Source: Macrostomum lignano
Lineage: Eukaryota
DNA: 64,000 nucleotides
NCBI GenBank assembly: GCA_002269645.1
Contig: NIVC01001468.1
Coordinates: 1-64,000 of the forward strand
Reading direction: 5' to 3'
Part shown: piece after piece, positions 4,597 to 63,876 of the stretch
Layout of the letters: every line of letters starts with the position of its first letter
Position numbering within the stretch: the stretch's first letter is position 1
Notes under the pieces: generated by a model
Databases searched by the model: none
What the model was told of the DNA's origin: nothing
Seen by the model: the letters and a program-made list of their open reading frames with translations, nothing else
Program-made: the position numbers and the translations under genes

Positions 4597-63876
<59,280 letters not shown>

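What the first reader, a model, noticed from the sequence alone, without database searches (positions are those of the whole stretch)
33069..33074. 6-nt microexon exactly at the vertebrate mini-exon B position
Seen: a 28-nt almost pure pyrimidine tract plus CAG, six bases, then perfect GTAAGT, inside the phase-1 intron between AQLYVR and Ig3. It adds 2 residues (YVR-AKF-RT vs YVR-V-RT). Known: vertebrate meB (4 aa, ELRE) at this linker changes Ig2-Ig3 spacing and ligand selectivity. Inference: an ancient or convergent linker-length switch with a different length and sequence. Standard annotation would miss it.
Basis: partly seen in the sequence, partly recalled or inferred. Interest (0 to 1): 0.85.

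Follow-up and report, generated by a model that had tools for sequence, protein, structure and literature searches.

The report
Predicted 6-base exon in flatworm LAR phosphatase
A flatworm (Macrostomum lignano) nerve-cell adhesion receptor gene carries what looks like a real 6-base mini-exon at the same domain-linker site where vertebrates use a 12-base mini-exon to change binding partners, but no RNA evidence for its use could be reached.

Summary
The sequence observation is correct. CAAAAT (33069-33074) lies between a 25-nt pyrimidine tract ending in CAG and a consensus GTAAGT. It sits in the 9.3-kb phase-1 intron between the Ig2 exon end (...AQLYVR) and the Ig3 exon of a LAR-type receptor tyrosine phosphatase gene of Macrostomum lignano. 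Inclusion gives YVR-AKF-RT; skipping gives YVR-V-RT.

The site aligns residue for residue with vertebrate mini-exon B (meB). The intron position and phase are shared by fish, amphioxus, mussel, snail, oyster and tick.

The signal is unlikely to be chance. Its acceptor is the strongest of about 9,000 AGs on both strands of the window. The acceptor-donor pair outscores every other pair in 440 kb of LAR loci. The chance expectation for this intron, in frame, is about 0.002-0.005.

Inclusion itself is unproven: no transcript of this gene could be reached. The only other copy of the locus is about 99% identical here and tells us nothing. None of about 15 invertebrate LAR fragments has an insert at this site, and none of the 5 invertebrate introns scanned has a convincing in-frame candidate. 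There is no UGC motif near the 3' splice site.

Verdict: probably a real, unannotated microexon (about 0.6). It is more likely a lineage-specific, convergent linker switch than an ancient meB.

The parts
24920..25030 (+). Upstream exon: second half of Ig2, ending ...AQLYVR plus G (phase 1), donor GAG|gtgaga
   Evidence: Aligns to Ig2 of PTPdelta and RPTPsigma. PWM scores: acceptor 10.3, donor 10.0.
25031..34327 (+). Phase-1 intron of 9,297 nt between Ig2 and Ig3. It is homologous in position and phase to the vertebrate intron that holds meB.
   Evidence: The same codon split (G|TG, G|TT or G|TA) is seen in mackerel, carp, amphioxus, mussel, snail, oyster and tick loci.
33042..33068 (+). 3' splice site of the candidate: a 25-nt pyrimidine tract (one G) followed by the AG of CAG. 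The nearest upstream AG is about 35 nt away. There is no UGC in the tract.
   Evidence: Acceptor score 14.8, the highest of about 9,150 AG dinucleotides on both strands of the window.
33069..33074 (+). Candidate 6-nt microexon CAAAAT. In phase 1 it reads G|CA AAA T|TT, giving Ala-Lys-Phe in place of Val (net +2 residues).
   Evidence: Top-scoring AG...GT pair in the window and in 440 kb of LAR loci.
33075..33080 (+). 5' splice site GTAAGT, a full match to the U1 consensus from +1 to +6. The exon's -1 base is T.
   Evidence: One of only 10 GTAAGT on the + strand. Donor score 8.6.
34328..34933 (+). Downstream exon coding Ig3 and the first FN3 domain. It starts TT CGA ACA (completing V or F, then R-T-I-S-P-H-F).
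   Evidence: About 99% identical to PAA53983.1 of M. lignano. Pfam I-set, Ig_3 and fn3.

Best explanation
The six bases are a genuine, unannotated coding microexon of a Macrostomum lignano LAR-family (type IIa) receptor tyrosine phosphatase gene.

The spliceosome recognises it through an unusually long U-rich tract with CAG, which would bind U2AF, and a consensus GTAAGT six bases later, which would bind U1. Such strong signals are what an exon too short for normal exon definition needs.

When the exon is skipped, the Ig2 exon joins Ig3 directly and the linker reads YVR-V-RT, the length seen in all other invertebrates sampled. When it is included, Val is replaced by Ala-Lys-Phe, which lengthens the Ig2-Ig3 hinge by two residues and adds a lysine.

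By analogy with vertebrate meB, this would change the reach and orientation of Ig3 relative to the Ig1-2 unit, and so which extracellular partners can bind. That step is inferred, not shown.

Shown: sequence, frame, position, phase and statistical rarity.
Inferred: that it is spliced in, that inclusion is alternative rather than constitutive (I put about 3:1 on alternative, given that it is real), and its effect on binding.

Its origin is most likely independent of vertebrate meB. The same ancient phase-1 intron would have served twice as a site for the birth of a new exon.
For: - Exact anatomy and an in-frame, stop-free insertion.
- The acceptor is the best in the window. The pair scores 23.4 against 12.4-20.3 for the four real exons first scored.
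- It is the only strong-acceptor/GTAAGT pair within 30 nt on either strand.
- Chance expectation in this intron, in frame, is 0.0015-0.005.
- It is the top hit in 440 kb of LAR loci from 8 species. The same scan ranks an annotated amphioxus 33-nt exon at the meA-equivalent site sixth and puts the true carp meB at the top of its intron, so the scan does find real microexons.
- The site aligns to the meB insertion point in solved PTPdelta and RPTPsigma structures (PMC4239663).
- Intron position and phase are conserved across bilaterians.
- The region is single-copy in the window, not a repeat.
- No Rfam family and no credible ORF on either strand explains it otherwise.
- The candidate's ...ttcag acceptor and GTRAGT-type donor fit this gene's own splice sites.
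- LAR-family genes are known carriers of microexons at this site (PMC8711739).
Against: - No transcript or protein showing inclusion, or even the skipped junction, of this gene could be retrieved.
- The only second copy (L001, NIVC01002990.1) is identical around the exon. That identity extends over a 2.1-kb block that includes a fast-evolving minisatellite, so it reflects recent common descent, not selection.
- No invertebrate LAR sequence sampled has an insert here.
- A frame-shifting pair of nearly equal score (22.4) sits in the snail's homologous intron, so strong pseudo-exons do occur.
- The exon's -1 base is T, which none of the gene's 11 mapped donors has.
- There is no UGC motif and no clear branch-point consensus upstream.
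- The weight matrices are generic metazoan ones written from memory, not trained on M. lignano.
Confidence: 0.6

Rival explanations
1. Chance pseudo-exon. A T-rich intronic tract that happens to end in CAG lies six bases before a chance GTAAGT. The spliceosome ignores it, or uses it at noise level, because a 6-nt exon cannot be defined without dedicated enhancers.
For: - No expression evidence exists.
- The snail intron holds a 22.4-scoring pair that cannot be coding.
- The meA-position intron of this same gene holds a good-looking 12-nt pair with an in-frame TAA.
- There is no UGC and no clear branch point.
Against: - The expectation is only 0.0015-0.005 for this intron in frame.
- It has the best acceptor of about 9,000 AGs.
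- It coincides with the one linker known to carry a regulated microexon in homologues.
Confidence: 0.28
2. A real but constitutive microexon. The 9.3-kb intron is always removed in two steps through this site, and the mature protein always reads YVR-AKF-RT. It would then be an annotation gap, not a switch.
For: The splice signals are far stronger than those of regulated vertebrate meB (23.4 against 11.8 for carp). They are also stronger than those of the gene's constitutive exons.
Against: - Direct Ig2-to-Ig3 joining restores exactly the Val and the linker length conserved in every other animal sampled.
- Very short exons generally need strong sites merely to be seen at all, so signal strength does not imply full inclusion.
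Confidence: 0.15
3. The site serves another purpose. It could be an acceptor for spliced-leader trans-splicing or for an internal or alternative transcript. It could be a zero-length recursive splice site. It could be a decoy that regulates removal of the long intron without contributing to the coding sequence.
For: The intron is long. From my own knowledge, not tested here, M. lignano uses spliced-leader trans-splicing.
Against: - It is not a recursive site: the AG is followed by CAAAAT, not GT, so the six bases must stay in the product.
- The inclusion frame upstream of the exon has a TAA at 33008-33010 and no ATG after it, so it is not an alternative coding first exon (read).
- A trans-spliced product starting here would lack the signal peptide and Ig1-2.
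- No RNA family matches.
Confidence: 0.05

Closest known systems
Vertebrate mini-exon B (meB) of PTPRD, PTPRS and PTPRF
   Same: - Same gene family.
- Same intron, with the same codon split in phase 1.
- Same insertion point, directly after the Arg of YVR at the Ig2-Ig3 hinge.
- Both preserve a hydrophobic residue before the next Arg. This comes for free here, because every NTT codon is hydrophobic.
- Both are far below normal exon size and frame-preserving.
   Different: - 6 nt against 12 nt, a net +2 against +4 residues.
- The peptide is AK(F), against ELRE or DQRE.
- The splice sites are far stronger (23.4 against 11.8 for carp meB).
- Vertebrate partners such as Slitrks, IL1RAPL1, IL-1RAcP and SALMs are not known in flatworms (my own knowledge).
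- Inclusion is unproven.
- No intermediate taxa carry an insert.
eMIC/Srrm234-dependent neural microexons of bilaterians
   Same: Very short, frame-preserving, in a neuronal adhesion/signalling gene, and preceded by a long pyrimidine tract (features as listed in PMC8797185).
   Different: - No UGC close to the 3' splice site; the nearest is 55 nt upstream.
- The AG-exclusion zone is only about 35 nt.
- There is no clear CUAAY branch point.
- The 3' splice site is strong rather than 'extremely weak'.
- Dependence on the factor is untested.
Microexons recurring at equivalent positions in distant phyla (spg, EndoB, unc-13 and unc-104 between fly and mouse)
   Same: This would be another case of a microexon in the same intron of orthologous genes in distant phyla. 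Torres-Mendez et al. 2022 (PMC8797185) read most of their cases as convergent.
   Different: Those four cases are backed by RNA-seq and knockouts, and Lar is not among them. This case is a genomic prediction only.
Amphioxus 33-nt exon at the meA-equivalent site (L005 29625-29657, annotated in P0161)
   Same: An invertebrate LAR-family microexon at a site used by vertebrates. The same scan picks it up with a high score of 20.4.
   Different: It lies in the Ig2 loop, not the Ig2-Ig3 linker. It is 33 nt long and present in an annotated gene model.

Membership tests
Type IIa (LAR-family) receptor protein tyrosine phosphatase gene | N-terminal signal peptide followed by three Ig domains most similar to those of PTPRD, PTPRS and PTPRF | tested here: met
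   The best PDB matches are PTPdelta and RPTPsigma Ig1-3, E about 1e-57 over residues 3-284. Pfam finds three I-set/Ig_3 stretches. The signal-peptide exon has its ATG at 4597.
Type IIa (LAR-family) receptor protein tyrosine phosphatase gene | A series of FN3 domains followed by a transmembrane segment | tested here: met
   FN3 exons were mapped with PAA53983.1. Pfam fn3 matches. A hydrophobic stretch [30 protein letters not shown] lies at the end of the last exon in the window.
Type IIa (LAR-family) receptor protein tyrosine phosphatase gene | Two tandem cytoplasmic phosphatase domains (D1, D2) | not testable with these tools
   The window ends just after the transmembrane segment. The M. lignano model retrieved (P0050) also stops before the cytoplasmic part.
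meB mini-exon of LAR-RPTPs | Lies in the phase-1 intron between Ig2 and Ig3 and inserts directly after YVR | tested here: met
   PMC4239663.
meB mini-exon of LAR-RPTPs | A 12-nt exon encoding ELRE or DQRE (sequence homology) | tested here: not met
   The exon is 6 nt and encodes A-K-(F). It shows no similarity to ELRE, EQRE or DQRE.
meB mini-exon of LAR-RPTPs | Phylogenetic continuity: the exon is present in lineages between vertebrates and flatworms | tested here: not met
   About 15 invertebrate fragments all have the skip-length linker. No ELRE-like 12-mer and no convincing in-frame candidate was found in the introns of amphioxus, mussel, snail, oyster or tick. Caveat: annotations and assemblies often miss microexons.
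meB mini-exon of LAR-RPTPs | Alternative, neuron- or activity-regulated inclusion that changes ligand selectivity | not testable with these tools
   No RNA-seq reads or transcripts of this gene could be reached.
eMIC (Srrm234)-dependent microexon | UGC motif close to the 3' splice site | tested here: not met
   There is no TGC between 33014 and 33068. The nearest is at 33011-33013. The motif definition comes from PMC8797185.
eMIC (Srrm234)-dependent microexon | Long polypyrimidine tract, long AG-exclusion zone and a strong branch point | tested here: inconclusive
   The tract is 25 nt long (met). The nearest upstream AG is about 35 nt away (modest). Only weak YTNAY matches exist, such as TTAAT at 33007-33011.
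eMIC (Srrm234)-dependent microexon | Skipping when the eMIC factor is lost | not testable with these tools
   This needs RNAi or knockout in M. lignano.
Recursive splice site (ratchet point) | A 3' splice site fused directly to a 5' splice site (YAG|GTAAGT) so that no bases are retained | tested here: not met
   Six bases (CAAAAT) separate the AG from the GT.

The most novel reading that the evidence does not exclude
The Ig2-Ig3 linker of LAR-family receptors was already a splice-regulated length switch in the bilaterian ancestor. On this reading, the flatworm 6-nt exon and vertebrate meB are descendants of one ancestral microexon, or of one continuously used splice hotspot. Both would be under neuronal (eMIC-type) control and would set the choice of synaptic partner long before Slitrks, IL1RAPL1 or SALMs existed.
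Probability: 0.06. Interest if true: 0.8.

Novelty: new variant of a known kind. Interest (0 to 1): 0.55.

Why it matters
LAR-family phosphatases are central presynaptic organisers. In vertebrates a 4-residue insert at the Ig2-Ig3 hinge decides which postsynaptic partners they bind and affects behaviour (PMC13080001, PMC12075705, listed). This 'splice code' is treated as a vertebrate feature. Fly and mouse microexon programmes share only four exons at equivalent positions, and Lar is not among them (PMC8797185).

A verified microexon at the same hinge in a flatworm would show one of two things. Either this linker is a recurrent target for the birth of new exons (convergence on linker length as a tuning knob), or, less likely, the switch is ancient.

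From my own knowledge, M. lignano can be made transgenic and is amenable to RNAi, so the function of a two-residue hinge insert could be tested in a simple nervous system. In practical terms, the case is an example of a coding exon that standard gene prediction cannot find.

Tried and rejected
1. Transcript or protein evidence.
- The word-indexed protein search with the spliced Ig1-FN1 protein returned only two truncated M. lignano paralogue models, which end at ...AHLYVR.
- Their contigs are not on record.
- Exact look-ups of the Ig3-exon ORF with a GTG or an ATG start found nothing.
- That search returned only proteins under 500 aa and did not return the near-identical PAA53983.1, so full-length isoforms were out of reach.

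2. Exhaustive HMMER search. The top 150 hits were swamped by giant multi-Ig proteins. It did yield P0050 (PAA53983.1), which identified the species and gave locus L001.

3. L001 as a comparative test. It was rejected as uninformative because it is about 99% identical here, and the identical block also covers a minisatellite.

4. Mackerel locus as a positive control. The gene (PTPRS-like by its name) showed no meB-like exon. It was replaced by carp PTPRD, where meB is annotated.

5. Other readings considered and rejected.
- Repeat or transposon origin: the region is unique in the window.
- Known RNA family: none.
- ORF on either strand: none credible.
- Recursive splice site: the AG and GT are not adjacent.
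- Alternative first coding exon: a stop at 33008-33010 and no ATG after it in frame.

6. Literature. I found no report of a meB-like exon in any invertebrate and nothing on M. lignano microexons.

7. The third protein search, the structure predictions and the metagenome and viral scans were not used. None could supply RNA evidence or a diverged Macrostomum intron.

Full report
**Observation.** The window reads tattttttctgtttttttcctcttttcag CAAAAT gtaagtcacc, with the six exon bases at 33069-33074. The clean pyrimidine tract is 25 nt (33042-33066) with one G. The nearest upstream AG is about 35 nt from the acceptor AG. The donor is a full GTAAGT.

**Gene and organism.** The + strand carries a LAR-type (type IIa) receptor tyrosine phosphatase gene.
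- Exon 1: ATG at 4597, a signal peptide, and the donor at 4744/4745.
- Ig1 exon: 13159-13464.
- Ig2 is split into 15805-15981 and 24920-25030.
- Ig3 plus FN1: 34328-34933.
- Further FN3 exons follow, and a transmembrane segment lies near 63.8 kb.

The best solved-structure matches are PTPdelta and RPTPsigma Ig1-3, with E about 1e-57. An exhaustive HMMER search returned P0050. This is PAA53983.1, 'hypothetical protein BOX15_Mlig000129g4' of Macrostomum lignano, and it is about 99% identical to the window's Ig3-FN exons. Its contig, NIVC01002990.1 of assembly GCA_002269645.1, aligns to window 29724-36527 at 97.5%. The window is therefore M. lignano or a very close relative. That locus (L001) is a second allele or duplicate copy.

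**Position relative to meB.** The Ig2b exon ends GTT CGA G|gtgaga in phase 1. The Ig3 exon begins TT CGA ACA.
- Skipping gives [11 protein letters not shown].
- Inclusion gives G|CA AAA T|TT, which is YVR-AKF-RTISPHF.

In alignments to PDB chains, the meB-plus PTPdelta chain reads YVR-ELRE-VRRVPPRF and the meB-minus chains read YVR-VRRVPPRF. The flatworm junction falls at the same point. Coles et al. 2014 place meB 'between R225 and V226' of RPTPsigma, at a hinge between Ig2 and Ig3 (PMC4239663). The intron after YV[RK] is phase 1 at the same codon in mackerel, carp, amphioxus, mussel, snail, oyster and tick. The site is therefore an ancient intron. 'Exactly at the meB position' is correct.

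**Is the signal more than chance?**
- *Simple pattern scan.* The + strand has 10 GTAAGT and 14 acceptors with at least 18 of 20 pyrimidines plus YAG. This is the only such acceptor-GTAAGT pair within 30 nt on either strand.
- *Position-weight scan of all AG...GT pairs 3-51 nt apart.* I used generic metazoan weight matrices written from memory. The candidate scores 14.8 + 8.6 = 23.4. The next best are 19.8 on + and 18.7 on -. In its own intron the next is 16.9, and that one shifts the frame. The four real exons first scored sum to 12.4-20.3.
- *Expectation from the window's own score distributions.* The acceptor is the single best of 4,161 (+) and 4,993 (-) AGs. The expected number of pairs this strong is 0.10 for the whole + strand and 0.005 for this intron in frame.
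- *Simulation.* Of 2,000 first-order Markov simulations of the intron, 15 gave any pair this strong and 3 gave one in frame without a stop.
- *Wider empirical scan.* The candidate ranks first across 440 kb (both strands) of LAR loci from eight species.

The scan has positive controls. The annotated amphioxus 33-nt exon at the meA-equivalent site scores 20.4 and ranks sixth. The true carp meB (AGCTGCGAGAAG, ELRE) ties for top of its 4.2-kb intron, although with only 11.8.

There is also a warning. A 16-nt frame-shifting pair in the snail's homologous intron scores 22.4. A 12-nt pair with an in-frame TAA lies in this gene's meA-position intron. Strong non-coding pairs do exist.

**Comparative evidence.**
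- L001 carries the exon and its flanks unchanged. However, the two copies differ by only two 1-nt indels across 31706-33795, against 89 differences over the 6.6 kb compared. That identical block includes a minisatellite. I read this as recent common descent or gene conversion, not as constraint.
- A profile search returned LAR Ig1-3 fragments from many animals. Those from amphioxus, tick, mosquito, aphid, cockroach, Biomphalaria, Mytilus, Sinanodonta, oysters, a brittle star and several unnamed transcript contigs all show the skip-length linker YV[RK]-x-R[RQAV]. Only vertebrate sequences show ELRE or EQRE.
- Scans of the homologous introns of amphioxus, mussel, snail, oyster and tick gave no strong in-frame candidate and no ELRE-like 12-mer.
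- The M. lignano paralogue models (52% identical in Ig1-2) stop at ...AHLYVR, and their DNA could not be fetched.

**Regulatory features.** PMC8797185 lists the features of eMIC-dependent exons. Only the long pyrimidine tract is clearly present here. No UGC lies within 55 nt upstream of the exon. The AG-exclusion zone is modest. No CUAAY-like branch point is evident. The 3' splice site is strong rather than weak. Srrm/eMIC dependence is therefore an open guess.

The candidate's ...ttcag acceptor and GTRAGT-type donor fit this gene's own splice sites. Its -1 T does not: none of the 11 mapped donors has T there.

**Alternatives.**
- Not a repeat.
- Not a known RNA.
- Not part of a credible ORF on either strand.
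- Not a zero-length recursive site, because AG and GT are six bases apart.
- Not an alternative coding first exon, because the frame has a stop at 33008-33010 and no ATG after it.

The live rivals are a chance pseudo-exon and a real but constitutive exon.

**Mechanism (inferred).** Strong U2AF and U1 sites allow a 6-nt exon to be recognised. This may happen by stepwise removal of the 8.0-kb upstream and 1.25-kb downstream introns. Inclusion swaps Val for Ala-Lys-Phe and lengthens the Ig2-Ig3 hinge by two residues. In vertebrates, lengthening this hinge by four residues alters binding of TrkC, Slitrk, IL1RAPL1, IL-1RAcP and SALM (PMC4239663 and PMC8711739). A similar but smaller geometric effect on unknown flatworm partners is the natural expectation.

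**Novelty.** I found no report of a meB-like exon outside vertebrates. Fly and mouse eMIC programmes share only four exons at equivalent positions, none of them in Lar, and most are read as convergent. If verified, this would be a new variant of a known kind: a microexon at a known splice site, in another phylum, with a different length and sequence.

| Reading | Estimate |
|---|---|
| Real spliced exon | about 0.6 |
| Alternative rather than constitutive, if real | about 3:1 |
| Chance pseudo-exon | about 0.28 |
| Common ancestry with meB | about 0.06 |

Noticed in passing
window 15982-24919, especially 18040-18051 and 18115-18132: Ig2 is split by an 8.9-kb phase-1 intron exactly at the vertebrate meA site (...SMSPN-G-DLIIAQ). 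The intron holds two adjacent microexon-like signals 63 nt apart. One is 12 nt (score 18.4) with an in-frame TAA. The other is 18 nt (score 18.3), in frame, and would insert six residues (GMFLKS), the same length as vertebrate meA6.
   Followed up: partly
window about 47500-47900 (also present in L001): An FN3-coding exon (...LRFCWRPPP...[15 protein letters not shown]...) is present in both genomic copies but absent from the annotated M. lignano protein PAA53983.1. That protein joins the exon ending at about 45769 directly to the one starting at about 49069. This may be a cassette FN3 exon, like the alternative FN4-7 of vertebrate LAR-family genes, or a gene-model error.
   Followed up: partly
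window 31706-33795 against L001: The two M. lignano copies differ at 89 places in 6.6 kb. In this 2.1-kb block they differ by only two 1-nt indels. The block spans the minisatellite at about 32330-32700 and the microexon. This looks like a recent shared haplotype or gene-conversion tract.
   Followed up: partly
window 32330-32700 and 36310-36830: The same 37-nt minisatellite family (ccccaatgtacacacgctcccgactagcctctctcaac) occurs in two different introns of the gene. Many other long tandem arrays fill the introns, at about 13.5-14.7, 23.7-24.8, 37.9-39.7, 42-43.4, 48-48.5, 50.7-51.4, 51.9-53.6, 54.3-55.1 and 57.1-58.1 kb.
   Followed up: no
L006 17749-17764 (Biomphalaria glabrata LAR locus, Ig2-Ig3 intron): A 16-nt frame-shifting AG...GTAAGT pair scores 22.4, almost as high as the flatworm candidate. 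It is either a chance pseudo-exon or a poison exon, and it was used as a caution on false positives.
   Followed up: no
L005 29625-29657 (Branchiostoma belcheri LAR-family locus): An annotated 33-nt exon encodes EQEPTETFSVS at the site equivalent to meA. An Ig2-loop insert is therefore present in a cephalochordate gene model, and my scan picked it up with a score of 20.4.
   Followed up: partly
L003 17882-17884 (Mytilus edulis LAR locus, Ig2-Ig3 intron): A 3-nt candidate, tatag|GAG|gtaagata (score 14.5), would add one Gly to the linker (YVK-GV-RR). It is the best in-frame candidate in that intron, but it is weak.
   Followed up: no
window 33228-33245: A GU-rich tract, TTTGTGTTTGTTTTGT, lies about 155 nt downstream of the candidate exon. 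It resembles CELF-type binding sequence. Its significance was not assessed.
   Followed up: no
window about 63213 onward against P0050 residues 911-932: The annotated protein PAA53983.1 ends in a +1 frame relative to the window's open exon (VTLHGRRRKW... against [13 protein letters not shown]...). This suggests a 1-nt difference or error in the other copy, or in its gene model.
   Followed up: no
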